Below the pieces are notes generated by a model. The model was not told where the DNA came from and did no database searches. It saw only the letters and a program-made list of their open reading frames with translations. 64,000 nt of DNA, from NCBI GenBank assembly GCA_002269645.1, contig NIVC01001113.1, positions 124,001-188,000 on the forward strand, in the 5' to 3' direction. Positions 18,205 to 61,953 of this stretch are shown here, piece by piece. Position numbers and translations under genes: made by a program. This stretch comes from Macrostomum lignano (Eukaryota). The stretch's first letter is position 1. Each line of letters opens with the position of its first letter.

Positions 18205-19553
18205 CGAGGGGCATCCCAAAAGTCCGTTCAGTCACTGAATAAAAACGCAACAGTGCAACAGGAAAGTTTAAAAACTTCATAGGCCTTCAAAATAACTTCC
18301 ATTGGCCGCAATCACACGCTGCCAGCGCTCTGGTAGTTTCTTGACTCCGTCAGTAGCGCCAGAATCACACAGGTGTTGAAGCACCTGGACGATGATGCTG
18401 AAGAGTTCGTCCAGGCAGTAGTAGCGGTGGCCTCGTAGCTGATTTTTTAGCTTTGGAAAGAGATCGAAGTCACAAGGACTCAGGTCGGGAGAATAGGCGG
18501 GATGAGGTAGGACTTCCCAGCCGTAGTTTGCCAGCAGCTCCTTGACAATCCAACCAGTGTGGGGGCTTGCGTTGTCATGCAGCAATAGGGGTCCATTCGA
18601 AAGTGTCAGTGCTCGCTTCTTCTGGAGCGCTGGTCGAAGATGGTAAATAATAAAGCGTCTGTAATACTGATTTACAGTCTGTCCCTCAGGCACTCTGTGT
18701 ACAAGAACCATACCAAAGTAATCATAGCAGACGATGAGCATCATCTTCTTGGACCCCTTGCTGCGCCTCAGGACTTCTGGCCGGGAAGACTGTGCGGCAG
18801 AACGGTCGCGCTGCTGCCATTCAGAATTCTGCGACTTTAGATTCGGTTCATATGAGCAGGCCCACGTCTCATCTAAAGTCACAATTCTCTGAAGAAATTT
18901 CTCTCCCTCCTTCCGAAAGCGCTGCAGCAGCTGCTGGGCAACAGTTCTCCGACGATCCTTCTGTGCATCATCCAGGTGGTGAGGCACCCATCGAGCTGTG
19001 ACCTTCTGCAAGCCCAGATCTTCTGTTAAAATTCGGTGCACACTAGTAGATGGAATTCCAGTCAGTTCCTCCAGTTCTTCACAAGTCCACCGACGATCGA
19101 TTTCGAGGATGCCCTTCACCAGCTCAACGTTGGCATCTGATCGAGACTCCCTTGGCCGTCCTGATTGCTGGCCATCCTCGATGTCGAATTGCCCATCTCT
19201 GAAGCGCGTATACCAATTGTACACAGATCTCTCAGTAAAGGCACGGTCTTTGAATGCTTCAACAAGTTGCCGGTGAACTTGCGCAGCTTTTGTTCCTCGC
19301 AAAAATTCGGCTTTGATGTACAAGCGTTGCTCGATATTGTTAACGTCCTCCATCAGTTAATCAGATCGGCCAAGTTTAAAATCACTAGACTGGTTAATTT
19401 ATTATAACACTTCGAATACTCGATATATAAGCTCAAAATTTTATAAAGTTAAAGAGGGGTTGCTCTAGTAAATAACTGTGAGTGGTTGAGCTCTTTACTC
19501 GTCGTTTATGGTAAAAACGGCACGTACTGAACGGACTTTTGGGATGCCCCTCG
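18205..19553 (-). mobile_element. Full-length mariner (Tc1/mariner, DD34D) DNA transposon, 1349 bp
   Basis: Perfect 28-bp TIR CGAGGGGCATCCCAAAAGTCCGTTCAGT (18205-18232 and 19526-19553) flanked by TA on both sides. Confidence 0.96.
18277..19353 (-). CDS. Mariner transposase, 358 aa, uninterrupted
   Basis: N-terminal HTH domains, WVPH and YSPDL motifs, catalytic TLDETW, LHDNASPH and SPCDF with D-34-D spacing. Confidence 0.95.
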   Translation of the reverse strand: MEDVNNIEQRLYIKAEFLRGTKAAQVHRQLVEAFKDRAFTERSVYNWYTRFRDGQFDIEDGQQSGRPRESRSDANVELVKGILEIDRRWTCEELEELTGIPSTSVHRILTEDLGLQKVTARWVPHHLDDAQKDRRRTVAQQLLQRFRKEGEKFLQRIVTLDETWACSYEPNLKSQNSEWQQRDRSAAQSSRPEVLRRSKGSKKMMLIVCYDYFGMVLVHRVPEGQTVNQYYRRFIIYHLRPALQKKRALTLSNGPLLLHDNASPHTGWIVKELLANYGWEVLPHPAYSPDLSPCDFDLFPKLKNQLRGHRYYCLDELFSIIVQVLQHLCDSGATDGVKKLPERWQRVIAANGSYFEGL

Positions 19554-24789: not shown

Positions 24790-24990
24790 ATGAAGTGGCA
24801 GCTCGCTCTCGGACTTTTGCTGTGCGCCGCCCTGGTCGTCGCCGTGCCCACCCAGGAGGAGAAGGCCATGGCCGAACGCGTGCTGGAGGAGACTCTGTCC
24901 AACATTGACGAGTCCAGCATGTCGAAGGAGAAGGCACTGGACCTGAAGAAGAAGATCTTCAGGGTTAGGGCCAGGATCCATATTGGTTAG
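24790..24990 (+). CDS. Secreted 66-aa prepropeptide, copy A (signal peptide, acidic spacer, KKK, IFRVRARIHI-Gly)
   Basis: Hydrophobic signal MKWQLALGLLLCAALVVA, GC-rich coding-like codon usage, ATCATGA start context, duplicated copy with only one amino-acid change. Confidence 0.8.
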   Translation: MKWQLALGLLLCAALVVAVPTQEEKAMAERVLEETLSNIDESSMSKEKALDLKKKIFRVRARIHIG

Positions 24991-26337: not shown

Positions 26338-26538
26338 CTAACCAATATGGATCCTGGCCCTAACCCTGAAGATCTTCTTCTTCAGGTCCAGTGCCTTCTC
26401 CTCCGACATGCTGGACTCGTCAATGTTGGACAGAGTCTCCTCCAGCACGCGTTCGGCCATGGCCTTCTCCTCCTGGGTGGGCACGGCGACGACCAGGGCG
26501 GCGCACAGCAAAAGTCCGAGAGCGAGCTGCCACTTCAT
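26338..26538 (-). CDS. Secreted 66-aa prepropeptide, copy B
   Basis: Identical to copy A except K46E in the acidic spacer; predicted mature peptide is unchanged. Confidence 0.8.
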   Translation of the reverse strand: MKWQLALGLLLCAALVVAVPTQEEKAMAERVLEETLSNIDESSMSEEKALDLKKKIFRVRARIHIG

Positions 26539-30107: not shown

Positions 30108-32054
30108 ATGCTAGTAAAACTTAAAGTACAAATTGTACTGATTATCTTATTATCCGTTTGTCCGTTAGCATTCGGCAGTCGAGTCAGCACAGACGAACAG
30201 GAACTGCTGTCTTATCTAATGGCAGACTACGATTCGGCATCCAGGCCTACTATCAACGCCGCCAAAACTGTGGAAGTCCGCTTTCAAATAGCGCTGGTTC
30301 AAATTTCGCAACTGGTAGGTTATGATTTATTGATGTCACATCTGTATTTTTGTCCCGTAGTTTATGATTGAAGGAAGGAATGATGGAGCACCTTCTAGAT
30401 GATTACAAAACAGCTGTGAAACGGTGGTGGAGACTGGGACACATTTAGGTTACTGTAGCGAACATCAGGATATGGTACAGCTGATGGGAGACAGTAGAGT
30501 GACAGCTGGGATAGAGTGGAGTAACAGCTGGAATACAGTAGAGTGACAGCTGGATTACAGTGGAGTGACAGCTGGGATACAGTAGAGTGACAGCTGAGAT
30601 AGAGTGCAGTGACAGGGAACACAGTAGAGTGACGGGGAACACAGTGGAGTGACAGGGAACACAGCGGAGTGACAGGGAACACAGCGGAGTGACAGGGAAT
30701 ACAGTGGAGTGACAGGGAACACAGTAGAGTAACAGGGAACACAGTGGAGTGACGGGGAACACAGTGGAGTGACAGGGAACACAGTGGAGTGACAGGGAAC
30801 ACAGTGGAGTGACAGGGAACACAGTAGAGTGACAGGGAACACAGTGGAGTGACGGGGAACACAGTGGAGTGACAGCTGGGATACAGTGGAGTGACAGCTG
30901 GAATACAGTAGAGTGACGGGGAACACAGTGGAGTGACAGCTGGGATACAGTAGAGTGACAGGGAACACAGTGGAGTGACAGCTGGGATACAGTAGAGTGA
31001 CAGGGAACACAGTGGAGTGACAGGAAACACAGTGGAGTGACAGGGAACACAGTGGAGTGACAGGGAACACAGTAGAGTGACAGGGAACACAGTAGAGTAA
31101 CAGGGAACACAGTAGAGTGACAGGGAACACAGTGGAGTGACAGGGAACACAGTGGAGTGACAGGGAACACAGTGGAGTGACAGGGAACACAGTGGAGTGA
31201 CAGGGAACACAGTGGAGTGACGGGGAACACAGTGGAGTGACAGGGAACACAGTGGAGTGACAGGGAACACAGTGGAGTAACAGGGAACACAGTGGAGTGA
31301 CAGGAAACACAGTGGAGTGACAGGGAACACAGTGGAGTGACAGGGAACACAGTAGAGTGACAGGGAACACAGTAGAGTGACGGGGAACACAGTGGAGTGA
31401 CAGGGAACACAGTGGAGTGACAGGGAACACAGTGGAGTGACGTGGTAGAGGCAGGGCTTGGCAGGAGAGTCCTTGAGAATACTGAAACAATAAAATAGCA
31501 GTTTATTTTTTTCGGCGAGCCAAAGATTTATCGTTAAAGTTTGCAATCTAAAAGTTGATTGCTAAAAAGGAAGTCTTCCGCAGTCATTTCCTATCCGGAA
31601 AGCGAAATAAAAAATGCTTGCACAGCCAAAGCTGCCTGCCTAGAAATAGCTAAGCTTTCTGAAGAGCTGTCAGACACGTGTCAAGAGAAAAGCCACAATC
31701 TATAAAGACAAATTTGTTTTGCCAAAGTCAGCATTAAAATATTAAGCTGGTGGGATTAAGCTTCAAGCGGACACGCCCTCAACCGCGGATCTTCTTGTCT
31801 TATGTTGGGGATTAGGGGGGGGGGGCGCTGCGAAATTCACTGGAGGTCGGTTTAAATATTGTTTAAAGTAACGTAAATATTTTCAACAATATATTTATCT
31901 GGGTATAATAAATGCAAACTGGGTATTTGCAGGACGAGGTCAATCAAGTGCTAACAACCAATGTCTGGCTTGAGCAGGTGAGTCCTTACATGCTACAGGT
32001 GATGTGTCCATATTCACCTAGTTGGTTAGTTAGTTAGTTATTTAGTTAGTTAGC

Positions 32055-32741: not shown

Positions 32742-35510
32742 CTAGTTAGTTAGTTAGTTAGTTAGTTAGCTAGTTAGTTAACTAGCTAGTTAGTCAGGCA
32801 GAACAAAATGTCAGAAAATCGCAAGTCAGACTTGTCACGCAGTCTACAGTCTTCAAGCAGAGAACTGGGCGACATGGAAGGCGGATCAAAGAACAAAAGC
32901 CATAAAAGTCAAGCCTGCAACTGGGCCAGTCTCCTTAATGCACTGACCACTCTGTATCTTTGCATGAGGCAGAAACATCTTCAGTATAAATAAGATGATA
33001 GGCAATAGTCTCTTTAGAGTTTTCAATATATATGTAAGGATTGAAAGCTTTTAATAAATGTACAACCAAAAGCCATCTTGGGTTTATTAGATAGATAAGC
33101 TACATGTAAATAGTCACCTGCACTTCTAGTAAGTAATTAAATGAAAATAGAAGCGGGCAATCAGAATGGCGCTGGGAAAAAAGGCATTTGAAATCATCAC
33201 TCAATTCAAATATTAAAAATTTCATCAGGAATGGCACGACGAACGGTTGCACTGGAGTCCGGAGAATTACAGCGGCCTTGCAGTGCTGAGAGTTCCCTGT
33301 CAGAAACTCTGGCTGCCAGATATTGTGCTGTATAACAGGTAAACTGGAGTGAGAACACATAAACCTTGGAGTGAAAACGGGTAAACTAGAGTAAGAACAG
33401 GTAAACTGGAGTGAGAACAGGTAAACTGGAGTGAGAACAGGTAAACTGGAGTGAGAACAGGTAAACTGGAGTGAGAACAGGTAAACTGGAGTGAGAACTG
33501 GTAAACTAGAGTAAGAACAGGTAAACTGGAGTGAGAAAAGATAACAGGTAAACCAGGAGTGAGAACAGGTAAACCAGGAGTGAGAACAGGTAAACCAGGA
33601 GTGAGAACAGGTAAACTGGAGTGGGAACAGGTAAACTGGAGTGGGAACAGGTAAACTGGAGTGAGAACAGGTAAACTGGAGTGAGAACAGATAACAGGTA
33701 AACCAGGAGTGAGAACAGGTAAACCAGGAGTGAGAACAGGTAAACTGGAGTGGGAACAGGTAAACTGGAGTGGGAACAGGTAAACTGGAGTGAGAACAGG
33801 TTTAAACTGGAGTGAGAACAGGTAAACTGGAGTGAGAACAGGTAAACTGGAGTGGGAACAGGTAAACTGGAGTGGGAACAGGTAAACTGGAGTGAGAACA
33901 GGTAAACTGGACTAAACTGCAGTAAAAATACTATCTGACTAAACATCCATTTGAACGGAAGAATTCACCTTGCCCTTCATCTCTGCTGCCTGACTATCCT
34001 GCCCCCCCCGCACGCAAAACGTTGACATGATTGACAGGTTTCAAGTAGCCACCATATGCCTGAAAAACTATATGAGATAAACAGGGGCAGTGATGTACGC
34101 GGAAGGGAGGAGGACCGTTGCCCCTCCTCTACCCCAATCAACCCACAGACATTGCACTCGTCTAAAAATTAAATCAACGTGGGTAACCCAGCTACTCGAA
34201 TGAAATGAGCTCAATTTTGCCGCCTCTTGGACATTGGCATCCACCGAGAGACAGGGGCGCCCACCAAGAGACAGGGGGCCAACGAAGAGACAGGGCCGCC
34301 CACCAAGAGACAGGGCCGCCCACCAAGAGACAGGGCCGCCCACCAAGAGACAGGGCCGCCCACCAAGAGACAGGGCCGCCCACCAAGAGACAGGGCCGCC
34401 CACCAAGAGACAGGGCCGCCCACCAAGAGACAGGGCCGCCCACCAAGAGACAGGGCCGCCCACCAAGAGACAGGGGTGCCCACAAAGAGACGGGGAAGCT
34501 GTCGTGTCACATTCCCTTGCATTGGGGTCTAACCACGGAGGAAAGAATAGAATGGAGTGCTAATCTGAGCCAGTTATTTTTATCTCGCTCGATTTTCGCT
34601 TTTAACATCCCTTTCCCCCCGTTCTTTCCTATCGGCTGAAAGCATATTTTAATGCGAGCTCGAACTATGCTGGGACAGACCTTTTAGAGGGAACGAAAGC
34701 GAAAGCGAGACGAAAAATACTTTGTCTATGGCAGTCACAAGCCAATAGGAAAGAACGGGGGGAAGGGATGTTAAAAGCGAAAATCGAGCGAGATAAAAAT
34801 AACTTGCTCAGATTAGCACTCCATTCTATTCTTTCCTCCATGGGTCTAACTTACGAGCGTATTCTAAAAATAGATTACCAATATTTCCATCACTGTTTCA
34901 TGCAAAATTTCAAAAAAAGTTGAGGTAAAATATGAATGTAATAAATTTATTGTCGATTTTGGGAATATCTAAGTTCGATATAGGCAGAGCATCGGTTACG
35001 CGGGAAAAACGCGATGCAGATAAGATAAGAGAATTCCCATAGTTAGACCTCGATTGCTTAGGTGCAGATTCTGTCAGATTATATCTGTTTAAAGAGAAGC
35101 GGTGCCGGGGTCAGCTGCAGGCCAAGCTGAAGCAGTGAAGGCCTGGGCGGAATTCGATACGCAGTGGCGTGCAGCGAAGATTTTGCGCCTCATAAAGTCA
35201 AGTGCCAACTTTGTGTTTCCTATAAGGGTGAAAATCTATTCAAGATTGATTGAGGGCCGGTAGAGCCACGTGACGGTACGGATAGGGAGACAAAATGAAC
35301 TGGTTGTTAAGGTCACGATGAAAAAGTTAAATGACAGAAAGTGACATTAAGAGTAAGGTCAGAGGAGCAGACAGACAGACAGACAGGCAGACACTAAGAC
35401 AGATAGACCGACACACAGACAGACAGACAGACAGACAGACGGACGGACAGACAGACAGACAGACAGACACTAAGACAGACAGACAGACAGACAGACGGAC
35501 AGACAGACAG

Positions 35511-35544
<34 letters not shown>

Positions 35545-35670
35545 GGACCGACAAACAGACAGACAGACACGCAGACGGACAGACAGACAGATAGATACAC
35601 AAACAGACAGACAGACAGGAAGACAGACAGACAGTCAGATAGATACACAGACAGACAGATATACAGACAG

Positions 35671-35713
<43 letters not shown>

Positions 35714-35724
35714 GGCAGACAGGC

Positions 35725-35765
<41 letters not shown>

Positions 35766-36935
35766 GGCAGACAGACGGACAGACAGAAAACAGAGAAAAG
35801 AGAGAAGGCAGAAAAGAGCAGAGAAGCGACACAAGCCTAGAGCGTGAGGGATCGCTACTTTGAAATATTCAAGAAGTTGAGAGCCAGAGTTTGCGAACCC
35901 CTGCTCTAATGCCAAACTGCACTTTATAAAACTGGATCTTCCGGATCCCCCATCCTGCAGCGCAGACGACTTCACCACGGGCTACATGCAGAGCAAGGCG
36001 ATGGTGGACTGCAACGGCACAGTGTTTTGGCCGCCCCCGGCAAAGCTACGATCGACCTGCAAAATCGATATCACGTATTTTCCGTTTGACGATCAGGTGT
36101 GCACAATGAAATTTGGCTCCTGGACCTACGATGGCTTTCAAGTGAATATAACTAAAAAGTGAGTTGAGCTTCTAGTTTCGAGCTCATGGGTTTTCAAGTT
36201 TTTGAATCTTCTAACTTGTGAATCTTCGAACTTGTGAATCTTCGAACTTGTGAATCTTCGAACTTGTGAATCGACGAACTTGTGAATCTTCGAACTTGTG
36301 AATCTTCGAACTTGTGAATCTTCTAACTTGTGAATCTTCTAACTTGTGAATCTTCGAACTTGTGAATCTTCGAACTTGTGAATCTTCGAACTTGTGAATC
36401 TTCGAACTTGTGAATCTTCGAACTTGTGAATCTTCGAGCTTGTGAAGCTTCGAACCTGTGAAGGCTCGAACTTGTGAAGCTTCGAGCTTGTGAAGCTTCG
36501 AACCTGTGAAGGCTCGAACTTGTGAAGCTTCGAGCTTGTGAAGCTTCGAACCTGTGAAGGCTCGAACTTGTGAAGCTATAGCCCTTCACGCATTTCGTCG
36601 AATCTCATGCAATATCTGGTTGGAATTTTGACGTTTAATTTTTAATTTATTGTTTTCAAACACCACGCAGACGAGAGGAGGTCGATTTCGAGAACTACGT
36701 TCAGAGCGGCGAGTGGAATCTCATACGGGTTGACGTTGAAAGACAAGAGGTCAGCAGTTGCTTACAGTTTCAAAACCAACTAACATGCACGTCAAGTATC
36801 ATTTTTAACTTTTTAGCAGCCAACTGAAAAAGTTCTTAACTTTGCCTACCAAAGACACAAAGGCAGACAACAAAGACAGACAAACAAACAGACAGACAGA
36901 CGACAGACAGACGACAGACAGACAGATACTAAGAC

Positions 36936-37007
<72 letters not shown>

Positions 37008-37075
37008 CGACAGGCAGGCAGGCAGGCAGGCAGACAGACAGGCAGGCAGGCAGGCAGACAGACAGGCAGACAGGC

Positions 37076-37108
<33 letters not shown>

Positions 37109-37186
37109 GGCAGACAGACAGGCAGGCAGGCAGGCAGGCAGGCAGACAGACAGGCAGGCAGGCAGGCAGACAGACAGACGGGCAAG

Positions 37187-37217
<31 letters not shown>

Positions 37218-39352
37218 ACAGACAGGCAGACAGGCAGGCAGGCAGGCAGGCAGACAGACAGGCAGGCAGACAGACAGGCAGACAGGCAGGCAGGCAGACA
37301 GGCAGGCAGACAGACAGACAGGCAGACAGGCAGGCAGGCAGGCAGACAGACAGGCAGGCAGGCAGGCAGACAGACAGACAGGCAGGCAGGCAGGCAGGCA
37401 GGCAGCAAGACAGGCAGGCAGGCAGGCAGGCAGACAGACAGGCAGGCAGGCAGACAGACAGACAGGCAGGCAGGCAGGCAGACAGACAGACAGGCAGGCA
37501 GACAGGCAGGCAGGCAGGCAGGCAGGCAGACAGACAGGCAGGCAGGCAGGCAGGCAGACAGACAGGCAGGCAGGCAGACAGACAGGCAAACAGGCAGGCA
37601 GACAGACAGGCAGACAGGCAGGCAGGCAGGCAGGCAGACAGTCAGACAGGCAGGCAGGCAGGCAGACAGGCAGACAGACAGGCAGGCAGACAGACAGGCA
37701 GGCAGACAGACAGGCAGACAGGCAGGCAGGCAGGCAGGCAGACAGACAGGCAGGCAGACAGACAGGCAGACAGGCAGGCAGGCAGGCAGGCAGGCAGACA
37801 GACAGTCAGACACAGAAAGTTCAAACCTGTACAATCAATTCAAATCCCGCAGACAGTCTATCCAATCAGCACAGTGCCATATCCGGACATCAAATTTCAT
37901 ATCGTTATTCAACGCAGAACGCTCTACTATCTGTTTAATATCATATTTCCATGCCTGTGGCTAACTGTGCTCAGCTTGCTCAGCTTCTGGTTGCCGCCAG
38001 ATTCTGGGGAGAAAATTACATTGGGCATCACTGTGCTGCTAGCCTTCTCAGTGTTCATGCTGCTTATTGCCGAGAATATGCCTGCGACTAGCGAGTTCGT
38101 GCCTCTCATTGGTAAGTGGCAAGGATCGCTGTGGGGGTAGGGGTGATCTGGAGGAGGGGTGCTGTGGGGGAAGGGTGCGTTGGGGGAATGCTGTGGGAGG
38201 AATGGGTGCTGTGGTGGGAAGGGGTGCTGTGGGGGGAAGGGGTGCTGTGGGGGAAGTGGTGCTGTGGGGGGAAGGGGTGCTGTGGGGGGAAGGGTGCTTT
38301 GGGGGGGGATGCTGTGGGGGGGAAGGGGTGCTGTGGGGGAAGGGGTGTTGTGGGGGAGGGGTGCTTTTGGGGGAAGGGGTGCTGTGGGGGAAGGGGTGCA
38401 GTTGTGGGGGGAAGGGGTGTTGTGGGGGCAAGGGTGCTGCGGGGGGAAGGGGTGCTGTGGGGGAAGGGGTGCTGTGGGGGAAGGGGTGTTGTGGGGGAAG
38501 GGGTGTTGTGGGGGCAAGGGTGCTGTGGGGGAATGGGTGCTGTGGGGGCAAGGGTGCTGTGGGGGGAAGGGGTGCTGTGGGGAAGGGGTGCTGTGGGGGC
38601 AAGGGTGCTGTGGGGGAAGGGGTGGTGTAAGGGGGAAGGGGTGCTGTGGGGGATTGGGTGCTCTAGGGAAAAAAGGGGTGCCGTTAGGGGGGGGGGAGGG
38701 GTGCACATGTGATTAACAGACGTGTTAACACTTTCTGCGAGCTTTTTGATATAGCAGATATGTACCTCATGCTACTTTACAATTGTACGGCACTAATGAT
38801 AGCTCCTCTGTACGCATTGCAGGAATCTACCTAACCGTCACAATGTCCACCACATCGCTGTCTATAGTCCTGACCGTGTTCGTGCTCCACCTGCACCACA
38901 TCGGCCCGAATGACAAGCCGGTGCCTCGCTGGCTGCGCCGGTTTCTATTCAAGCGCCTGGCGCCACTGCTCTGCATGACCTCAGTGGCGCGCTATCAGCG
39001 CAAGGCGCGTCGCAAGCGTCGAGAGTTGCGCCAACTCGACGATTCAGATCAGCCTGCAGTTGATGACATCACTGACGAGGCGGAAGACGAGTTAGAGACA
39101 GCGACGTGCACCACCACAGCGTCGACATTCAGGCAGCAGCATCAATTTCGACAGTCCATCCGTTTGGATCGGCATATCCGGCGACTGATGCGACAGCAAC
39201 TCGACGATGAAGCGGCCCAGCTGTTGATCAGCGACTGGCGCACAGTCGCCTACGTCATGGACCGGCTGCTATTCTGGCTGTTCTTAACTGCCGCGTTCAC
39301 GTCAACTCTGATCATACTGGTTGTCATGCCGCTGTTTAAGAAAGTTCTTTGA
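30108..39352 (+). CDS. Nicotinic acetylcholine receptor-family (Cys-loop) subunit, cation-selective type, no loop C vicinal cysteines; 7 exons, about 475 aa
   Basis: Exons 30108-30314, 31933-31977 (conserved 45 nt), 33229-33338 (conserved 110 nt), 35961-36158, 36671-36749, 37853-38111, 38823-39352 (1428 nt, in frame). Signal peptide; WLPDIVLYN; Cys-loop [15 protein letters not shown]; GSWTYDG; RRTLYY; [13 protein letters not shown]; M4 DRLLFWLF. Confidence 0.95.
30480..31445. repeat. 20-bp minisatellite (GACAGGGAACACAGTGGAGT)n in nAChR intron 1
   Basis: About 48 units; source of three long spurious minus-strand ORFs. Confidence 0.95.
32020..32792. repeat. (TTAG)n microsatellite in nAChR intron 2
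   Basis: About 770 bp of TTAG with CTAG variants. Confidence 0.97.
33330..33925 (+). repeat. 20-bp minisatellite (AACAGGTAAACTGGAGTGAG)n starting at the exon 3 donor
   Basis: The first unit is the genuine exon-intron junction TATAACAG|GTAAACTGGAGTGAG. Confidence 0.93.
34245..34490. repeat. 20-bp minisatellite (AGACAGGGCCGCCCACCAAG)n
   Basis: About 12 units. Confidence 0.92.
34533..34843. mobile_element. 311-bp MITE with about 105-bp inverted arms and an apparent 6-bp TSD
   Basis: Ends CCACGGAGGAAAG and CTTTCCTCCATGG; GTCTAA on both flanks. Confidence 0.75.
35365..35790. repeat. (GACA)n microsatellite
   Basis: Direct reading. Confidence 0.96.
36200..36580. repeat. 16-17-bp minisatellite (GAATCTTCGAACTTGT)n in nAChR intron 4
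   Basis: Direct reading. Confidence 0.92.
36875..37810. repeat. Compound (GACA)n/(GGCA)n microsatellite in nAChR intron 5
   Basis: Direct reading; it fuses a spurious [11 protein letters not shown] to real exon 6. Confidence 0.96.
38125..38700 (+). repeat. G-rich about 17-bp minisatellite (GGGGAAGGGGTGCTGTG)n in nAChR intron 6
   Basis: Dense G4-G7 tracts on the transcribed strand. Confidence 0.92.
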
Positions 39353-40549: not shown

Positions 40550-42776
40550 TTACGAACCATCCAATTTATAGACTGCACAGTCAGTAAAATCAGTATTAGT
40601 CTCAGAGTTGAGCTGTTGAAACACGTCGCTCAGTTCCTTAGTCAGTAACTGGTGCAGTTTGGAACCATCGTGAGAGTAAGTCCACTCGCCACTGTCCGCA
40701 CTGTAATCAAATCGTTTCGGTCCTGAGGTTGGCGAAGACAGCCATATTTGCCGGTTCGGCGTCTGCTTGTTGATCACGTAGGTGCCGTGCTCACCGAGAC
40801 TCAAAGTGAGCACGCCGCTTGCCAGCGTGACGTCATAGTCGCTTGAGTCAGCTGATTTTGATAGAAGATCGTCAACTTTATCGGCGATTCGTTCCAGCAC
40901 TTCGTCTGTGACGTGTTCGAAATCTCCGAGAGACAGCTCGGCTGCGGGTCTGAGGGAAAAGATGGCAGGTTGTTCTGCAGTGGGTCTGAGGGCAGGGATG
41001 GCAGGCTGCTCGGCTGCGGGTCTGAGGCTGAGGACAGGTTGTTCAGTTGCGTGTCTGAGGCTAAGGGCAGGTTGTTCTGCAGTGGGTCTGAGGCTGAGGA
41101 CAGGTTGTTCTGCTGCGGGACTGAGGGCAGGCTGTTCTGCTGCGGGACTGAGGGCAGGCTGTTCTGCAGTGGGTCTGAGGGCAGGCTGTTCTGCAGTGGG
41201 ACTGAGGGCAGGCTGTTCTGCTGCGGGACTGAGGGCAGGCTGTTCTGCAGTGGGTCTGAGGGCAGGCTGTTCTGCAGTGGGTCTGAGGGCAGGCTGTTCT
41301 GCAGTGGGTCTGAGGGCAGGCTGTTCTGCAGTGGGTCTGAGGGCAGGCTGTTCTGCAGTGGGTCTGAGGGCAGGCTGTTCTGCAGTGGGTCTGAGGCTGA
41401 GGACAGGTTGTTCTGCTGCGGGACTGAGGGCAGGCTGTTCTGCTGCGGGACTGAGGGCAGGCTGTTCTGCAGTGGGTCTGAGGGCAGGCTGTTCTGCAGT
41501 GGGTCTGAGGGCAGGCTGTTCTGCAGTGGGTCTGAGGGCAGGCTGTTCTGCAGTGGGTCTGAGGGCAGGCTGTTCTGCAGTGGGTCTGAGGGCAGGCTGT
41601 TCTGCAGTGGGTCTGAGGGCAGGCTGTTCTGCAGTGGGTCTGAGGGCAGGCTGTTCTGCAGTGGGTCTGAGGGCAGGCTGTTCTGCAGTGGGTCTGAGGG
41701 CAGGCTGTTCTGCAGTGGGTCTGAGGGCAGGCTGTTCTGCAGTGGGTCTGAGGGCAGGCTGTTCTGCAGTGGGTCTGAGGGCAGGCTGTTCTGCAGTGGG
41801 TCTGAGGCTGAGGACAGGTTGTTCTGCTGCGGGACTGAGGGCAGGCTGTTCTGCTGCGGGACTGAGGGCAGGCTGTTCTGCAGTGGGTCTGAGGGCAGGC
41901 TGTTCTGCAGTGGGTCTGAGGGCAGGCTGTTCTGCAGTGGGTCTGAGGGCAGGCTGTTCTGCAGTGGGTCTGAGGGCAGGCTGTTCTGCAGTGGGTCTGA
42001 GGGCAGGCTGTTCTGCAGTGGGTCTGAGGGCAGGCTGTTCTGCAGTGGGTCTGAGGGCAGGCTGTTCTGCAGTGGGTCTGAGGGCAGGCTGTTCTGCAGT
42101 GGGTCTGAGGGCAGGCTGTTCTGCAGTGGGTCTGAGGGCAGGCTGTTCTGCAGTGGGTCTGAGGGCACGCTGTTCTGCAGTGGGTCTGAGGCTGAGGACA
42201 GGTTGTTCTGCTGCGGGACTGAGGGCAGGCTGTTCTGCAGTGGGTCTGAGGGCAGGCTGTTCTGCAGTGGGTCTGAGGGCAGGCTGTTCTGCAGTGGGTC
42301 TGAGGGCAGGCTGTTCTGCAGTGGGTCTGAGGGCAGCCTGTTCTGCAGTGGGTCTGAGGGCAGGCTGTTCTGCAGTGGGTCTGAGGGCAGGCTGTTCTGC
42401 AGTGGGTCTGAGGGCAGCCTGTTCTGCAGTGGGTCTGAGGGCAGGCTGTTCTGCAGTGGGTCTGAGGGCAGGCTGTTCTGCAGTGGGTCTGAGGGCAGGC
42501 TGTTCTGCAGTGGGTCTGAGGGCAGGCTATTCTGCTGCTAGCAGCAAGATCAACTTACGATTTAGCGGAACCACCGGACTCAGTTGAGCTGGCCAACAAT
42601 CGAATCGAACTCGGTACTACACCAATCGAATATCGAATAAGCGGGCTTAACGCTTGAACGCAACAAGCATAGCGAATGGATTTAGTGCCGATTTGATTGA
42701 CAGCTGTTGATGGGCTGCAGCTGGTCAGAGCTCTGCGAGAGAGCAAATATCGGATGGGAGGCTGAAAGCGATGCAT
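40550..42776 (-). CDS. FXN: Frataxin (CyaY family), 2 exons, about 205 aa
   Basis: Exon 1 42776-42559 encodes an Arg/Ser-rich, acid-poor mitochondrial-type presequence and ends at a GTAAGT donor in phase 2; exon 2 40949-40550 follows a TCTTTTCCCTCAG acceptor and encodes DVTLASGVLTL, YVINKQTPNRQIWLSSPTSGPKRFDY and LHQLLTKEL. Confidence 0.92.
40952..42530. repeat. 27-bp minisatellite filling the frataxin intron (sense unit CAGCCTGCCCTCAGACCCACTGCAGAA)
   Basis: About 55 units with periodic 33-nt variants (higher-order duplication); reading frames stay open through the array. Confidence 0.96.
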
Positions 42777-54348: not shown

Positions 54349-54789
54349 ACACTGCTATTATAGGCATTAGTGGTATAGGCAAAGGGGGGATATAGGGATC
54401 TAACCCTCCCCCCCCCATGGGCCTGGTCGATGGGTATAAGAAATGGAAAGCATAGTGCATGCTAATACATGCTAATGCAAATCAAAAAACAATTTTTATT
54501 TACTAAAGCAAAGCAAGAATTTTTTCTATTTTTCCACTAAATTGTGAATTTGAGTAGGTACTAGCAATCTACGCCTCCCATTGGGGAGCCAAAGAAATGC
54601 AATACACATTTTTTTAATAAGCTACATGCATCCTTGAAATCTTAAAAAATCTCTTGTCAAACTTTGTAAGCCTTGACATGTCAGTAATTCCCCCCCCACA
54701 AGCTTTAACATATCAACTTCCCCCCCCCTTGACATCTCAGCAATGCCCCCAATAAGCCTTGGAAATCTAAAAATATCTGTCAACCTTCC

Positions 54790-55400
54790 CTACCCTACCC
54801 TACCCTAGCCTAACCCTAACCTTAATGCCCCCTTAATGCCCTCAGTTAAGGTTCTACGCTTAACTGATGAGCCCCAATAAGGGCGAAACCACAGTCTTAA
54901 GCTGACACCCTTGAAAAATTTATCCTATACCATGTCTGAATTCCTTGCTTCCCCTATCCCCTCCTTGAAATCAATCCCCTTTGAGGCAACTGATGGCCCT
55001 GGTCTCCAGGTTGTCTGGGGGTGCCCCCTAGGCTGGCTGGTTCCCCCTAGTCCCGTCGCCCTGTTCCGGTCTGGGTTGAGACCCCAGTACCCGAGGACAC
55101 TGTGGCAGAGGCCAGTGCCTCCTCCCCCTCCTCCTCCTCCTTCCCCCAGCCTCCCCTGGTGGTGCCCTGGATCTCCCACAGACCTGGGCCCCAGTTGCTT
55201 CAATTAGCAAAAGTATCCAACCTCACCTTACCCTAACCCTAACCCCTAACCCTAATCCCTTATCCTAACCCTAATCCTAACCCTTACCCTAACCCAATCT
55301 CCTTCTGCCTCTGGTCCCCTGGTATCTTAATCTGCCTATCCTGCAACCCCATACCATAAGTCCTAACCCTTAACCCTAACCCTAACCTAACCCTAAAGCA
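54790..55400 (+). repeat. Degenerate interstitial telomere-like (CCCTAA)n tracts
   Basis: CCCTAA, CCTAA and CCCTA runs at about 54790-54835 and 55220-55400. Confidence 0.7.
54858..54902 (+). ncRNA. Minimal type I hammerhead ribozyme
   Basis: GCTTAA (stem I), CTGATGA, GCCC-caataa-GGGC (stem II), GAAAC-caca-GTC, TTAAGC (stem I prime). Complete catalytic core; predicted cleavage after GUC at 54896. Confidence 0.82.
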
Positions 55401-56249
55401 TTGAAATTTCAGTAATAATTCTCTCTAAGAGTCATTATTGCACTACTATAGCATTATAGCGATTCCCTGCAAGCCTCAACATCGTAGGGATTCCCAAATA
55501 AATCTCTTAACTTCGACATGAAGCTTCTTTTATTTTTTACATTACGTTTTTTTTATCAGCAATCCCTCCCCTGAGGAGGCATCAAATAATGTAATAAAAA
55601 GTTTTCAATAAACTACATCTAGCTTCTGACTTTAGCCTTGAAATCTCATTTATACCCCCGTGAGCCTTGACATCTCAGCTATTCCCCCCGTAAGCCTTAA
55701 CATGTCAGCGATGGCCCCCATAAACTTTGAAATCTAAAAAATCCCCTGTTATTCTGTTAACCTTGAAACCCAATAAAATATAACCCTCAACCCATACCTG
55801 ACCTAAACCTAACTTTAATAACCCAACCTAAAGCCTTGAAATCTCAGCAATTCTTCTCCCCTAAGCCTTGACATTTTAGTGATTCCTTCTTTAAGAATCA
55901 CAGCACTATAACAATTTCCACCAAGCTTTGACATCGTAGCAATTCCCAAATGAATCTTTTAACTTTGACATGACTTTTCTTTTATGTATACATAGTGCTA
56001 CTTTTATTTTTTACATGACTCTTCTTCTATCAGCGCCCCCCCCTGTGGCGAGCCAACAAAGAATGCAATAAAAAATTGAGTAAAGTACATGAACTTTGAA
56101 GTAGCTTCTGACTTTTGCTTTGACATCTCAGAAACCCCCCCCCATAATCTCAGTTATTCTCTGAGAGCCCTGACGTCTCAGTTTTTCTCCCCAGCACAGC
56201 ATTATAGCTTCATTTAATTTTTACATGATACCCTTGCTTCTTAATTTTT

Positions 56250-59200
56250 TAAATGACACTTTCATTAGTTTTTAAATAAGGCTTCTATGATTGTTTATAT
56301 GACGCTTCTAAGATTTTTTAAATGATGCTTCTATGATTTTTTAAATGACGCTTCTATGATTTTTATATGACGCTTCTACAATTTTTTAGATGACGCTACT
56401 ATGAATTTTTACATGACGCTTCTATGATTGTTTACATGATGCCTCTATGATTGTTTACATGACGCTTCTATGATTTTTTCATGACGTTTCTATGATTGTT
56501 TACATGACGCTTTAATGATTTTTACATGACGCTTCTATGATTTTTTCATGATGCTTCTATGATTTTTTACATGACACTTCTATGCTTCTTACATGACGCT
56601 TCTATGATTGTTTACATGATGCTTCTATGATTGTTTACATGATGCTTCTATGATTGTTTACTTGTCGCTTCTATGATTGTTTACATGACGCTTCTATGAT
56701 TTTTACATGACGCTTTTATGATTGTTTACATCACGCTTCTATGATTGTTTACATGATGCTTTTATGATTGTTTACATGACACTTCTATGCTTTTTATATG
56801 ACACTTTTATGATTGTTTACATGACACTTCTATGATTGTTTACATGACGCTTTAATGATTGTTTACATGACGCTTTTATGCTTGTTTACATGACACTTCT
56901 ATGATTTTTTACATGACGCTTCTATGATTGTTTACATGATGCTTCTATGATTGTTTACATGATGCTTCTATGATTTTTTACATGACACTTCTATGATTTT
57001 TCACGTGACGCTTTTATGATTTTTTCACATGACGATTTTATGATTTTTATATGACGTTTCTGTAAGCACTGGAATTGCGCTTACATCGAAGCGAAAAAAC
57101 AACGGCCTCCTCTCGTCTCGACCGGTTCTATCCAGCCAGACCAGCTCTACACTAAAGGGCAGATAACAAAGCTGAGGTTTGAAGGCCAAGCCAGCAGCCT
57201 GCGAATGTATGACACAGTAGACTCGCAGCAATGCTTTGGGGGGGGGTGATATGGTTGCCTAACAATGGGACAGAGAAAAATGCTCGAGCGATAACCCTGC
57301 CCCACTCAAACTATGCATTGCTCTTCATTTTGTCAACTAAACCAGTTTGCTTGCTTGACTATAAAATACACTGTCTCACACTTTGAGCCTCACACTCATA
57401 ACAGGGCCCTCAGAGGCCAGTGTGTTAGAAAGTCTTTCTGACTTGTGAGCAGAAGATAACAGGAATAGAAACTGTTATATCTGGTTCCCTGAGAGTGAGT
57501 CACCCAGTTCCACCAACTTTGACTAAGGGTGATTGCAACAGGCCTTCTCCATTGCTAGATAACATCATCCTGCCATAGGTCAAAAAGAACGTGCTCGATC
57601 AAGGTCAGTGTAAAGTCAACAAGTCATCTCATCAAGCAAGCAAGAAGACCAAGTTGCAACGTGTTTCAACATCATCAGAAATCCGAGGCCCAATGCAATT
57701 AATTCGTCCTCAACTAACCAAGATTCTCAAGAGAGCCAAGAGACAATTATCGACGTGGTATGCTTGATGACATTAAGACGCGACTGTGACGCACCAAGCC
57801 GTTACAAATGTGCAGCCGCCACTCTACTTGATGCGTTAAATGGCAATCCAAGAGATATCAGTACAAAACCTATTTATCTTCTATGCGTGTAGTGCTTAAG
57901 TCGGTCAAGGCACAACTTTGGATCGAACAAAACATTTGGCAGTCATTTCTTCGAATTTTTGGCCTACGACTTGGCGTACACAACGGATCAATTGAACAAG
58001 TGAGAATTTAAACTCAATTAGTAACACTGCCAGATTGCGACACTAGACGTGCAACCAAGCAAGCCTGATGGAGTTCTGCAGTCACAGTATTTCAAGATAT
58101 CCGCGAATTGAAAATTGAGTAACTACTGACGACTACTTCGGGGGAAAAGAGCCCCATGAAAAACACAAACACAAACTGTACTGCAAACAGAAAAGACTTG
58201 CTGGTTTGTAACTTCTGACAAACGAACCCTGCCCAAACCGACTCAACTACGACGCACAACCAATCAGCCGACCAAGTAGCCCAGCCAGAAAACTAGTGAC
58301 GAATTCAAGTATGAAACTGCTTATTAGGACAAAGTCATATCAAGAAGAAGCAACACCTTTGTGTCAGACTGACACGAGTGTCAGTCTCCAAAAAGGAGAA
58401 GATATATAAGCACTGGAATTGTGCTTACATTGAAGCAAAAAAAACAACAGCCTCCTCTCGTCTCGACTGGTTCTATCCAGCCAGACCAGCTCTACACTGA
58501 AAGGCAGATAACAAAGCTGAGGTCCGAAGGCCAAGCCAGCAGCCTGCAAAGGCGTGACACAATAGACTCGCAGCAATGCTTTGGGGGGAGGTGATATGGT
58601 TGCCTAACAATGGGACAGAGAAAAATGCTCAAGCGATAACCCTGCCCCACTCAAACTATGCATTGCTCTTCATTTTGTCAACTAAACCAGTTTGCTTGCT
58701 TGACTATAAAATACACTGTCTTGAATAATTTGCGGTATAGAGAGATTCGGAGATGTGAGTCTCACACTCATAACAGGGCCCTCAGAGGCCAGTGTGTTAG
58801 AAAGTCTTTCTGACTTGTGAGCAGAAGATAACAGGAATAAAAACTGTTATAGCTTCTATGATTTTTTACATGACGCTTCTATGATTATTCATATGACACT
58901 TCTATGATTTTTTAAATGACGCTTCTATGATTTTTTATGACGCTTCTACAATTTTTTACATGACGCTTCTATGATTGTTTACATGACGCTTCTATGATTT
59001 TTTATATGACACTTCTATGATTGTTTACATGACGCTTCTAAGATTTTTTACATGATGCTTCTATGATTGTTTACATGACGCTTCTGTGATTGTTTACATG
59101 ACGCTTCTATGATTTTTTAAATGACGCTTCTATGATTTTTTATGACGCTTCTACAATTTTTTACATGACGCTTCTATGATTGTTTACATGACGCTTCTAT

Positions 59201-59510
59201 GATTTTTTATATGACGCTTCTATGATTGTTTACATGACGCTTCTAAGATTTTTTTACATGATGCTTCTATGATTGTTTACATGACGCTTCTGTGATTGTT
59301 TACATGACGCTTCTATGATTTTTTTATGATGCTTCTATGATTTTTTACATGACACTTCTATGATTTTTACATGACGCTTCTATGATTGTTTACATGAAAC
59401 TTCTATGACTGTTTACATGACGCTTCTATGATTGTTTACATGACGCTTCTATGATTGTCTACATGACGCTTTTATGATTTTTACATGACGCTTCTATGAT
59501 TTTTACATTA
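56250..59510. repeat. 23-bp minisatellite (ATGACGCTTCTATGATTGTTTAC)n split in two by an LTR element
   Basis: Arrays at about 56250-57060 and 58852-59510. Confidence 0.93.
57061..58851 (+). mobile_element. Non-autonomous LTR retrotransposon (TRIM/LARD-like), 1.8 kb
   Basis: LTRs 57061-57479 and 58405-58851; PBS TGGTTCCCTGA at 57482-57492 complementary to a tRNA-Glu 3-prime end; PPT AAAAAGGAGAAGA before the 3-prime LTR; 5-bp TSD GTTTC/GCTTC with one mismatch; no internal ORF. Confidence 0.85.
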
Positions 59511-60922: not shown

Positions 60923-61953
60923 TATTCATCTAGTCACCGGACAAATAACAACTGACTTTAATTTTTAATTTAAAAACTCTCTATGCTATGCTATTGTGGT
61001 ATTGTCTGGAAATCCGCAGAAAAATGTTCATATTATTGAGTATAGACCAATTTATCCATAATCCTCAGATTTTTGTTGAATTTGCTAGGACAAATTTTAA
61101 TTTTGAGAGTATTATTTATTTTAAATTTTTTTATAATATCCCACATTTTGGAAGATTAATAGTACACTTGAAATTTTCAAATTATTATTGGATAGTTTAA
61201 CTGTTTTGACATACCACTTTTAGCTCAAGTAAATTTTTGGCATATCAACTTAAATAAATACAAAATTATATAGTGCTTAAAGTATATAACTTAAAATATA
61301 TAGATTATATATAGATACATGTACTATAGTATTATATATATATATATAGTCTATGTACATGTACATATTAAATAGTATTAATATATACTATAGTACATGT
61401 ATCTATATATAATCTATATATTTTAAGTTATATACTTTAAGCACTATATAATTTTGTACTATATTAATATATACTATAGTACATGTATCTATATATAATC
61501 TATATATTTTAAGTTATATACTTATATACAATAGTATATATTAATACTATAGTACATGTATCTATATATAATCTATATATTTTAAGTTATATACTTTAAG
61601 CACTATATAATTTTGTATTTATTTAAGTTGATATGCCAAAAATTTACTTGAGCTAAAAGTGGTATGTCAAAACAGTTAAACTATCCAATAATAATTTGAA
61701 AATTTCAAGTGTACTATTAATCTTCCAAAATGTGGGATATTATAAAAAAATTTAAAATAAATAATACTCTCAAAATTAAAATTTGTCTTAGCAAATTCAA
61801 CAAAAATCTGAGGATTATGGATAAATTGGTCTATACTCAATAATATGAACATTTTTCTGCGGATTTCCAGACAATACCACAATAGCATAGCATAGAGAGT
61901 TTTTAAATTAAAAATTAAAGTCAGTTGTTATTTGTCCGGTGACTAGATGAATA
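60923..61953. repeat. About 1-kb near-perfect palindrome (foldback-like element)
   Basis: Arms of about 410 bp are reverse complements with very few mismatches; the AT-rich centre has internal duplications. Confidence 0.93.

What the first reader, a model, noticed from the sequence alone, without database searches (positions are those of the whole stretch)
54790..55400. Hammerhead ribozyme embedded among telomere-like repeats: relic of a Penelope-like or retrozyme-type element
Seen: a complete core (CUGAUGA, stem II, GAAA, GUC) with a perfect 6-bp stem I and a very short stem III, flanked on the same strand by degenerate CCCTAA tracts and followed by about 300 nt of GC-rich unique sequence. 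Established: minimal type I hammerheads with weak stem III occur in Penelope-like pLTRs and metazoan retrozymes and often cleave as dimers; endonuclease-lacking Penelope-like elements carry C-rich telomeric repeats on their sense strand. Inference: a non-autonomous, telomere-repeat-associated self-cleaving retroelement inserted interstitially; no RT ORF is in this window.
Basis: partly seen in the sequence, partly recalled or inferred. Interest (0 to 1): 0.7.

Follow-up and report, generated by a model that had tools for sequence, protein, structure and literature searches.

The report
Lone hammerhead ribozyme retroelement relic
A real but solitary, probably inactive hammerhead self-cleaving RNA motif sits in a roughly 500-base GC-rich insert lodged in a telomere-like tract of an AT-rich tandem repeat; this is the usual leftover of a ribozyme-carrying retroelement in an animal genome.

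Summary
A complete type I hammerhead lies at 54846-54920 (+), with cleavage predicted after C54896. It is the only Rfam match in the window at E<=0.01 (Hammerhead_HH9, 45.8 bits, E 1.4e-8), but it falls below the family gathering score of 52. Helix I is 6 bp, helix II is 4 bp, and the loop nucleotides match the canonical metazoan design. Helix III is only 2 bp, and its loop CACA is not palindromic, so neither monomer nor dimer cleavage looks favoured. CCCTAA-like tracts flank it on the same strand.

The motif lies in a ~510-nt insert of 55% GC. This insert makes one unit of a ~480-bp, 36% GC tandem repeat 994 nt long. It sits at a degenerate telomere-like tract that the repeat unit already carries. 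I found no second copy, no tandem arrangement and no reverse transcriptase.

Most likely this is a solo relic of a retrozyme or Penelope-derived non-autonomous element. The layout of endonuclease-lacking Penelope elements, where telomeric repeats directly follow the ribozyme, is not met. It is a known kind of element, of modest interest.

The parts
54440..54783 (+). Host sequence: AT-rich (36% GC) degenerate ~480-bp tandem repeat, left part of unit A, with 30-nt sub-repeats AGCCTTGAMATCTCAGC..CCCCC.
   Evidence: Positions 54515-54826 align with unit B at 55521-55819.
54784..54825 (+). Left telomere-like tract: (CCTAC)3 CCTAG CCTAA CCCTAA CCTTAA. It aligns with the native degenerate tract of repeat unit B, so it is most likely host sequence or a duplicated target.
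54820..54841 (+). Perfect 11-nt tandem duplication CCTTAATGCCC x2, exactly at the left junction between host homology and insert.
   Evidence: Read directly from the sequence. The left homology with unit B ends at 54826.
54846..54920 (+). Type I hammerhead ribozyme motif, whole Rfam HH9 model span. The outer stem is 54846-54851 with 54909-54914, and the internal loop 1 is UCUAC / UGACA.
   Evidence: 45.8 bits, E 1.4e-8 for the whole window.
54858..54863 (+). Helix I, 5' strand GCUUAA. It pairs with 54897-54902.
   Evidence: Three of its six pairs differ on both sides from the metagenome relatives while staying paired.
54864..54870 (+). Catalytic core C3-A9 (CUGAUGA).
54871..54884 (+). Helix II GCCC/GGGC with loop 2 CAAUAA. 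This stretch is identical in 8 metagenome contigs.
54885..54896 (+). G12 A13 A14, then helix III (A-U and C-G only, loop CACA), then the cleavage-site nucleotide C17 at 54896. Predicted scission is between 54896 and 54897.
   Evidence: Helix III adds +1.3 kcal/mol to the fold, and the dimer form is -0.3 kcal/mol.
54897..54902 (+). Helix I, 3' strand UUAAGC.
54921..55225 (+). Non-coding body of the insert, unique in the window. It contains a long imperfect hairpin (about 54980-55205, 68% GC in its core) that gives the RNA a rod-like fold.
   Evidence: MFE -129.4 kcal/mol, z = -3.06, 0 of 100 shuffles as stable; no other copy; no Pfam match for the ORFs on either strand.
55226..55295 (+). (CCCTAA)~11 tract, the least degenerate of the three (80% matches, two perfect CCCTAACCCTAA). 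It has no counterpart of this length in repeat unit B, so it was probably brought in or generated with the insert.
55296..55336 (+). 41-nt non-telomeric spacer between the insert's tract and the host tract. Its origin is unexplained: it could be a PLE-type 'tail', filler DNA or a second tiny fragment.
   Evidence: Its similarity to the insert body is no better than chance (13% of shuffles score as well).
55337..55399 (+). Native telomere-like tract of host repeat unit A. It aligns along the whole of unit B's tract 55781-55830.
55400..56235 (+). Host tandem repeat continues: rest of unit A, unit B at 55620-56101 (482 nt), and the start of unit C. These units carry no hammerhead.

Best explanation
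The segment of about 54827-55336 is a solitary copy of a small, non-coding, hammerhead-bearing retroelement. That element is of the metazoan non-LTR retrozyme type, which is itself thought to derive from Penelope-like pLTRs.

In the parent element the ribozyme would cut multimeric transcripts after GUC. This gives unit-length RNAs with 5'-OH and 2',3'-cyclic phosphate ends. A tRNA ligase circularises these RNAs, and a reverse transcriptase supplied in trans copies them. These steps are inferred from the family, not shown here.

One such cDNA became fixed inside one unit of an AT-rich ~480-bp tandem repeat, at a degenerate telomere-like tract the unit already carried. The (CCCTAA)~11 tract at the insert's 3' side suggests that C-rich repeats on the RNA, or telomerase-like repeat synthesis, took part in priming or joining at the TTAGGG-like target. 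This is inference.

The copy present now is alone. Its helix III is 2 bp with a non-palindromic loop, and it has no partner ribozyme. It is therefore most likely catalytically weak and without function: a relic.
For: - Genuine hammerhead: it is the only Rfam match in 64 kb at E<=0.01 (HH9, 45.8 bits, E 1.4e-8, full-length alignment including the outer stem and loop 1).
- All core positions are intact.
- Eight metagenome contigs share the exact 26-nt core plus helix II. Two of them (L004, L006) reach the Hammerhead_1 gathering score.
- Against those relatives, helix I of the window copy keeps pairing through changes on both sides at 3 of 6 pairs. Overall 90% of cells are paired, against 20-44% when the partner columns are slid.
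- Insert status: unit A of the host repeat is 994 nt and unit B is 482 nt. The flanks align with unit B up to 54826 and again from 55337.
- The insert is 55% GC and the host repeat is 36-37% GC.
- Non-coding and structured: the ORFs have no Pfam match, and the fold z-score is -3.06.
- Architecture matches the published canonical metazoan hammerhead: helix I 6 bp, helix II 4 bp, helix III 1-2 bp with a 2-4 nt loop (PMC4209133).
- Solo monomer copies of retrozymes and their link to PLE pLTRs are described in bioRxiv 10.64898/2026.07.22.740005.
- Eukaryotic hammerheads are reported close to telomeric sequences (PMC4209133).
Against: - The score is below Rfam's gathering threshold for HH9 (45.8 against 52), and the gathering-score scan lists no family for the window.
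- There is only one copy, with no tandem arrangement, which is the defining layout of non-LTR retrozymes.
- At 55-57% GC the insert exceeds the <45-50% reported for metazoan retrozymes (PMC7229834).
- No other copy of the body sequence was found in the window or in the 8 related contigs.
- No RT was recognised in 29 ORFs scanned.
- The insert boundaries cannot be fixed to the base. The host units are only about 70-75% alike and the junctions lie in low-complexity sequence (one search gave several near-equal solutions).
- The 41-nt spacer 55296-55336 is unexplained.
- Insertion, as opposed to deletion in the other units, is inferred and not proven.
Confidence: 0.65

Rival explanations
1. The ancestral tandem-repeat unit was the long form (~994 nt) and carried the hammerhead in every unit, making it a satellite or retrozyme-like array. 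Units B and C then lost the segment by recombination between the flanking telomere-like tracts.
For: The segment is bracketed by similar tracts that could recombine. Unit B's tract aligns to both the left and the right tract of unit A. Hammerhead satellites with units of a few hundred bp are known (PMC7229834).
Against: - The segment is 55% GC and the rest of the unit is 36% GC.
- A deletion product should join the 5' part of the left tract to the 3' part of the right tract. Instead, the whole of unit B's tract, including its 5' signature CAACCCATACC, matches the right tract.
- No remnant of the segment is present in units B or C.
Confidence: 0.12
2. It is a 5'-truncated endonuclease-lacking Penelope-like element (Athena/Coprina type). 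That element was added to a chromosome end by priming on the G-rich overhang and capped by telomerase, and the site was later internalised or copied to this position.
For: C-rich telomeric repeats lie on the sense strand on both sides of a ribozyme-bearing fragment. This is the pattern described for telomere-associated PLE arrays (PMC8557442; PMC6431247).
Against: - In those elements the repeats lie immediately downstream of the ribozyme. Here they are 305 nt downstream.
- Sequence with genes (a phosphatase-like ORF, a Cys-loop receptor, topoisomerase II) extends 54 kb on the side where the chromosome end would have to be.
- The flanking tracts match a tract native to the host repeat.
- No RT remnant was found.
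Confidence: 0.12
3. It is a host-domesticated, functional hammerhead, as HH9 is in an amniote intron. It would process a host transcript.
For: The best Rfam match is to the HH9 model over its full length, with loop nucleotides conserved.
Against: - It lies in a repeat-rich stretch with no recognised exon nearby.
- Helix III is weak.
- The score is below the HH9 gathering score.
- The window's genes are far from any amniote, with topoisomerase II at most 58% identical to anything in the collection. HH9 orthology is therefore excluded, and the resemblance reflects shared type I architecture.
Confidence: 0.04
4. It is a chance match to the hammerhead consensus in low-complexity sequence.
For: The bare three-block motif is not rare: 2 found against 0.42 expected. 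The hit is also below the gathering score.
Against: - E is 1.4e-8 for the whole window against all 4227 families.
- Helix I, helix II, the outer stem and both loops all fit the model.
- The 26-nt core plus helix II is identical to those of hammerheads that pass Rfam's threshold.
Confidence: 0.01

Closest known systems
Metazoan non-LTR retrozymes: tandem repeats with canonical type I hammerheads, such as coral, mussel and axolotl repeats, newt satellite 2 and Schistosoma Sm-alpha (PMC7229834)
   Same: - Canonical type I hammerhead with 6-bp helix I, 4-bp helix II, short helix III and conserved loop 1/loop 2 nucleotides.
- Small non-coding body of a few hundred nt.
- Strongly structured RNA (z = -3.06).
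- Solo monomers are known.
   Different: - A single copy rather than a tandem array.
- 55-57% GC instead of <45-50%.
- The helix III loop is not palindromic.
- A telomere-like tract lies at the 3' side.
- Circular RNA and mobility are untested.
[quoted passage not shown]
   Same: Full-length alignment to the 77-nt model, including the outer stem, UAC / U-AC in loop 1 and CAAxAA in loop 2.
   Different: - 45.8 bits, below the gathering score of 52.
- Helix III is shorter (ACC..GGU in the model, AC..GU here).
- It is not intronic in a conserved gene, and the source is not an amniote. The resemblance is of architecture, not orthology.
Hammerheads of Penelope-like element pLTRs (min-HHR; PMC4209133)
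   Same: The hammerhead is associated with a retroelement. Most genomic copies are single motifs taken to be truncated elements. Some PLE clades have a bias for insertion into microsatellites (PMC8557442).
   Different: The min-HHR has helix II of 7-8 bp, helix I of 4-5 bp, and no helix III or loop contacts. This motif has the canonical design. No RT or GIY-YIG ORF and no second pLTR are present.
3' module of endonuclease-lacking PLEs and Terminons (Athena, Coprina): a hammerhead followed at once by reverse-complement telomeric repeats (PMC6431247, PMC8557442)
   Same: The hammerhead and the C-rich telomeric repeats are on the same strand within one short element. The element is bracketed by telomeric repeats.
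   Different: - The repeats are 305 nt downstream of the ribozyme, not adjacent.
- The location is interstitial.
- The repeat is CCCTAA rather than the rotifer ACACCC/TCACCC.
- No RT was found.
Hammerheads in metagenome contigs L004 and L006 (MKWU01030082.1, JGIcombinedJ30088_10031104), which pass the Rfam Hammerhead_1 threshold
   Same: Identical 26 nt, CUGAUGA-GCCCCAAUAAGGGC-GAAAC. Helix III has the same 2 bp. Each is solitary on its contig.
   Different: - Helix I is GCCACA/UGUGGC rather than GCUUAA/UUAAGC.
- The helix III loop is AGCU (palindromic) rather than CACA.
- The flanks are unrelated and carry no telomere-like tracts.

Membership tests
Hammerhead ribozyme, type I (Rfam clan CL00010) | Conserved core: C3 U4 G5 A6 N7 G8 A9, G12 A13 A14, A15.1-U16.1, and H17 at the cleavage site. 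| tested here: met
   All positions are present at 54864-54870 and 54885-54896, with C17 at 54896.
Hammerhead ribozyme, type I (Rfam clan CL00010) | Three helices around the core, with helices II and III capped and helix I open-ended. | tested here: met
   Helix I is 6 bp, helix II is 4 bp, and helix III is 2 bp with a 4-nt loop. Helix III is marginal, contributing +1.3 kcal/mol.
Hammerhead ribozyme, type I (Rfam clan CL00010) | Reaches a curated Rfam gathering score. | tested here: not met
   HH9 scores 45.8 bits against 52. The gathering-score scan lists no family for the window. E is nevertheless 1.4e-8.
Hammerhead ribozyme, type I (Rfam clan CL00010) | Stems kept by compensatory change among relatives. 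| tested here: met
   Three of six helix I pairs changed on both sides against four metagenome relatives. Of 500 shuffles, 10 reach the observed value, and slid controls give 20-44% paired against 90%. The sample is small (5 sequences), and helices II and III are invariant.
Hammerhead ribozyme, type I (Rfam clan CL00010) | Self-cleavage after H17. | not testable with these tools
   Needs in vitro transcription. The modelled dimer helix III is -0.3 kcal/mol, against -12.5 for the palindromic relatives.
Metazoan non-LTR retrozyme | Head-to-tail tandem repeats, each unit with a type I hammerhead (at least 2 units). | tested here: not met
   There is one hammerhead in 64 kb and no second copy of the body.
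Metazoan non-LTR retrozyme | Unit of about 170-400 nt, non-coding. | tested here: met
   The distance from leader to tract is 399 nt (54827-55225). The ORFs on both strands have no Pfam match. Unit ends cannot be defined from one copy.
Metazoan non-LTR retrozyme | Low GC content (<45-50%). | tested here: not met
   55-57% GC.
Metazoan non-LTR retrozyme | Expressed as linear and circular unit-length RNA. | not testable with these tools
   No transcriptome data are available.
Penelope-like element (fragment of pLTR) | Telomerase-like RT, with or without a GIY-YIG endonuclease ORF, flanked by pLTRs. | tested here: not met
   No RT or GIY-YIG Pfam match in 29 ORFs, including all those of 80 aa or more with non-trivial composition between 49.6 and 64 kb. 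Short or decayed remnants could have been missed.
Penelope-like element (fragment of pLTR) | Metazoan pLTR hammerhead of the minimal kind: long helix II, short helix I, no helix III. | tested here: not met
   Helix II is 4 bp, helix I is 6 bp, helix III is present and the loop motifs are conserved (compared with PMC4209133).
Penelope-like element (fragment of pLTR) | [quoted passage not shown] | tested here: inconclusive
   A 41-nt non-telomeric piece at 55296-55336 lies at the 3' side. With one copy its origin cannot be checked, and its similarity to the body is at chance level.
Endonuclease-lacking PLE / Terminon 3' module | Reverse-complement telomeric repeats on the sense strand immediately downstream of the hammerhead. 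| tested here: not met
   The strand is the same, but the downstream tract starts 305 nt after the motif. The adjacent tract is 20 nt upstream.
Endonuclease-lacking PLE / Terminon 3' module | Location at or next to a chromosome end. | tested here: not met
   54 kb of gene-bearing sequence lies on the side the telomere would occupy, and 8.6 kb lies on the other side. The wider chromosome position is unknown.

The most novel reading that the evidence does not exclude
The insert represents a small non-autonomous hammerhead element whose RNA carries its own (CCCUAA)n tract. It uses that tract to prime reverse transcription on TTAGGG-like 3' ends. It could then colonise both chromosome ends and interstitial telomere-like microsatellites. 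This would make it a retrozyme-sized partner of endonuclease-lacking Penelope-like elements, in an animal lineage where such elements have not been described.
Probability: 0.12. Interest if true: 0.55.

Novelty: new member of a known kind. Interest (0 to 1): 0.3.

Why it matters
Hammerhead-bearing retroelements (retrozymes, Penelope-like elements) are widespread in animals. Solitary decayed copies are their expected debris, so the finding mainly adds an annotation.

Two points give it modest value:
- The motif is a clear hammerhead that the default Rfam threshold misses, which is a reminder that solo copies with a short helix III go unannotated.
- It sits in a pre-existing telomere-like tract and carries a fresher CCCTAA run of its own. 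If this recurs at other copies in the source genome, it would link retrozyme-type elements to the telomere-repeat priming so far ascribed to endonuclease-lacking Penelope-like elements.

Tried and rejected
- Source organism: an exact look-up of the intact mariner transposase found nothing. A topoisomerase II exon found no relative above 58% identity. The organism and its genome are therefore not in the searchable collections, and genome-wide copies could not be counted.
- Further protein search: for the same reason I did not spend one on the spurious ORFs across the insert.
- Metagenome scan with the 26-nt core plus helix II: it gave 8 contigs with hammerheads of the same design, but the flanks are unrelated, with no telomeric tracts and no RT ORFs. 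These are useful for covariation only. L001 and L003 have a broken helix I.
- Thermodynamic test of the catalytic fold. The catalytic fold scores -13.2 kcal/mol against an MFE of -18.7. In longer context an alternative 9-bp hairpin, 54842-54850 with 54859-54867, is preferred at -20.3.
- I rejected that thermodynamic result as evidence of inactivity. The relatives that pass Rfam's threshold show the same gap between catalytic fold and MFE.
- Exact insert boundaries by scanning all deletions against unit B: several near-equal solutions, so the boundaries are not resolvable.
- Tail similarity to the insert body: at chance level.
- Delta-virus-like circular RNA fragment: rejected, because those agents carry extended type III hammerheads, not type I (PMC7936874).
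- Six-frame Pfam scan of 50-64 kb: the tool refuses translations that contain stop codons. It was replaced by scans of stop-to-stop ORFs.
- The second loose motif hit at 57647-57678 (minus strand) has no helix II and no Rfam support.
- Two papers could not be read because they are not held.

Full report
**Observation**

The sequence at 54846-54920 on the + strand contains a complete type I hammerhead. Its parts are:
- Helix I: GCUUAA (54858-54863) with UUAAGC (54897-54902), six perfect pairs.
- Core: CUGAUGA at 54864-54870.
- Helix II: GCCC/GGGC capped by CAAUAA, at 54871-54884.
- GAA at 54885-54887.
- Helix III: only A-U and C-G around the loop CACA, at 54888-54895.
- Cleavage-site nucleotide: C at 54896.
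- Beyond helix I: an internal loop (UCUAC on the 5' side, UGACA on the 3' side) and an outer stem, 54846-54851 with 54909-54914.

The default Rfam scan at gathering scores lists nothing in the window. A scan of all 64 kb at E<=0.01 lists exactly one match: Hammerhead_HH9 at this site, 45.8 bits against a gathering score of 52, E 1.4e-8, aligned over the whole 77-position model. The bare three-block motif alone is not significant (2 found, 0.42 expected). The evidence therefore lies in the full structure.

CCCTAA-like tracts lie on the same strand at 54784-54825, 55226-55295 and 55362-55396. CCCTAACCCTAA with up to one mismatch gives 12 matches against 0.24 expected, and 10 of those fall in 54808-55396. 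The 305 nt after the motif are unique in the window and GC-rich.

**Relatives and covariation**

A scan of the metagenome contigs for the 26-nt core plus helix II found eight contigs. Two of them (L004, L006) reach the Hammerhead_1 gathering score.
- They share helix II, loop 2 and the two helix III pairs with the window copy.
- Their helix I is GCCACA/UGUGGC, and their helix III loop is the palindromic AGCU.
- On the alignment, the window copy keeps helix I paired through changes on both sides at three of six pairs.
- 90% of cells pair, against 20-44% when partners are slid.

The sample is small, but together with the Rfam score it leaves chance as a negligible explanation. The flanks of those contigs are unrelated to the window and hold no telomere-like tracts and no RT ORFs. 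They therefore say nothing about the element that carried the window's ribozyme.

**Kind of hammerhead**

Published descriptions separate two designs.
- The canonical metazoan type I motif has helix I of 6 bp, helix II of 4 bp, interacting loops, and helix III of 1-2 bp with a small palindromic loop.
- The minimal motif of metazoan Penelope pLTRs has a long helix II, a short helix I, and no helix III or loop contacts (PMC4209133).

The window copy has the canonical design, which is the one carried by non-LTR retrozymes (PMC7229834). It departs in one respect: its helix III loop, CACA, is not palindromic. Motifs with a short helix III are reported to cleave well only as dimers that build a long helix III (PMC6155905; PMC7229834). 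Modelled that way, the window sequence gives -0.3 kcal/mol, against -12.5 for the AGCU relatives. There is also no second copy to pair with. I therefore expect weak or no cleavage, but this is a prediction.

A comparison of the catalytic fold with the minimum-energy fold looked unfavourable. I discarded it because hammerheads that pass Rfam's threshold show the same gap.

**Context**

Positions 54440-56235 form a degenerate tandem repeat of about 480 bp at 36% GC. It has 30-nt sub-repeats and leads into a 23-bp minisatellite.
- Unit B (55620-56101) is 482 nt. Unit A (54626-55619) is 994 nt.
- Unit A aligns with unit B up to 54826 and again from 55337.
- The roughly 510 nt in between are 55% GC and contain the hammerhead.
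- Unit B has its own degenerate telomere-like tract (55781-55830). That tract aligns fully with unit A's right tract (55337-55399) and partly with the left tract (54786-54826).

The simplest reading is an insertion at a telomere-like tract native to the repeat, with an apparent but poorly matching duplication of about 39 nt. The 70-nt (CCCTAA)~11 run at 55226-55295 is less degenerate than the host tract and has no counterpart in unit B, so it came with the insert or was made during insertion.

The exact boundaries cannot be fixed. A perfect 11-nt tandem duplication (CCTTAATGCCC x2, 54820-54841) marks the left junction. A 41-nt non-telomeric piece (55296-55336) at the right remains unexplained. 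Its similarity to the insert body is at chance level.

**The insert body**

The body RNA is significantly structured: MFE -129.4 kcal/mol, z = -3.06, with none of 100 shuffles as stable. This is due to a long imperfect hairpin spanning about 54980-55205. The open frames across it on both strands have no Pfam match.

**Partner genes**

No RT or endonuclease domain was found in 29 ORFs scanned. These include every ORF of at least 80 aa with non-trivial composition between 49.6 and 64 kb, and the ORFs of the transposon-rich stretch at 20-27 kb. The window otherwise holds topoisomerase II exons, an intact mariner transposase and a Cys-loop receptor exon, so the source is an animal. Its topoisomerase II is at most 58% identical to anything in the protein collection, and the mariner protein is not on record. 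The genome is therefore not available to these tools, and copy number could not be tested.

**Interpretation**

The best explanation (confidence 0.65) is a solo relic of a small, non-coding, hammerhead-bearing retroelement of the retrozyme kind. A recent preprint derives that kind from Penelope pLTRs and notes solo monomers (10.64898/2026.07.22.740005).

In the parent family the ribozyme trims multimeric transcripts to unit length. The units are circularised by a tRNA ligase and reverse-transcribed in trans (PMC7229834). None of these steps is shown for this copy.

The telomere-like target and the fresh CCCTAA run suggest that base pairing between C-rich repeats in the RNA and a TTAGGG-like 3' end helped priming, as proposed for endonuclease-lacking Penelope elements (PMC8557442). 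This is inference.

The specific layout of those elements places the repeats immediately downstream of the ribozyme at a chromosome end (PMC6431247). That layout is not met here. The downstream tract is 305 nt away, the near tract is upstream and looks like host sequence, and 54 kb of gene-bearing DNA lies where the chromosome end would be.

**Rivals**

- An ancestral long repeat unit with loss in the other units (0.12).
- An internalised terminal addition by an endonuclease-lacking element (0.12).
- A domesticated functional ribozyme (0.04).
- Chance (0.01).

**Verdict**

However, the motif is the canonical type rather than the minimal Penelope type. The dimer mechanism is not supported for this copy, the telomere-associated Penelope layout fails its defining test, and family membership beyond 'hammerhead' cannot be shown from one copy.

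It is a new member of a known kind, and interest is 0.3. The most novel reading still open is a telomere-tract-priming retrozyme. It has about 0.12 probability and would need recurrent junctions of the same kind elsewhere in the source genome.

Noticed in passing
window 60923-61334 and 61542-61953: Perfect (100%) 412-nt inverted repeat with a 207-nt spacer, in 26% GC sequence. It could be a foldback element or an assembly artefact.
   Followed up: no
window 56236-57061 and about 58865-59500: A 23-bp minisatellite GCTTCTATGATTTTTTAAATGAC (about 36 copies) recurs 2 kb further on. Its unit resembles part of the ~480-bp repeat unit at 55520-55545.
   Followed up: partly
window 57094-57482 and 58439-58854: A direct duplication of about 390 nt at 95-97% identity lies between the two minisatellite blocks, so the locus is a nested segmental repeat.
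   Followed up: no
window 18277-19353 (minus strand): Intact 358-aa mariner/Mos1-type transposase ORF (HTH_48, DDE_3). The exact protein is not on record in the public collection.
   Followed up: partly
window 2610-10401 (minus strand): Topoisomerase II is encoded in few, long exons. The best identity to any protein in the collection is 58%, so the source animal has no close sequenced relative there.
   Followed up: partly
window 35394-38716 and 38783-39352: A Cys-loop receptor transmembrane exon (Neur_chan_memb) is preceded by long (GACA)n-type and proline-rich low-complexity arrays that read open in several frames.
   Followed up: no
window 30395-31546 and 40801-42587: Two long tandem arrays with open frames on both strands (units translating as ...[20 protein letters not shown]... 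and ...PSDPLQNSL...). They are probably minisatellites rather than genes.
   Followed up: no
window 54842-54867: A 9-bp hairpin (UCAGUUAAG / CUUAACUGA) competes with helix I and sequesters C3-A6 of the core. Such alternative folds also occur in relatives that pass Rfam's threshold, so its meaning is unclear.
   Followed up: yes
L008 1484-1533 (also L002): These metagenome contigs carry two hammerhead cores in opposite orientation about 40 nt apart. That arrangement is reported for truncated Penelope-like insertions (PMC4209133).
   Followed up: no
window 24959-24970 (minus) and 26358-26369 (plus): CCCTAACCCTGA occurs once on each strand, 1.4 kb apart. These may be terminal inverted sequences of another element.
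   Followed up: no
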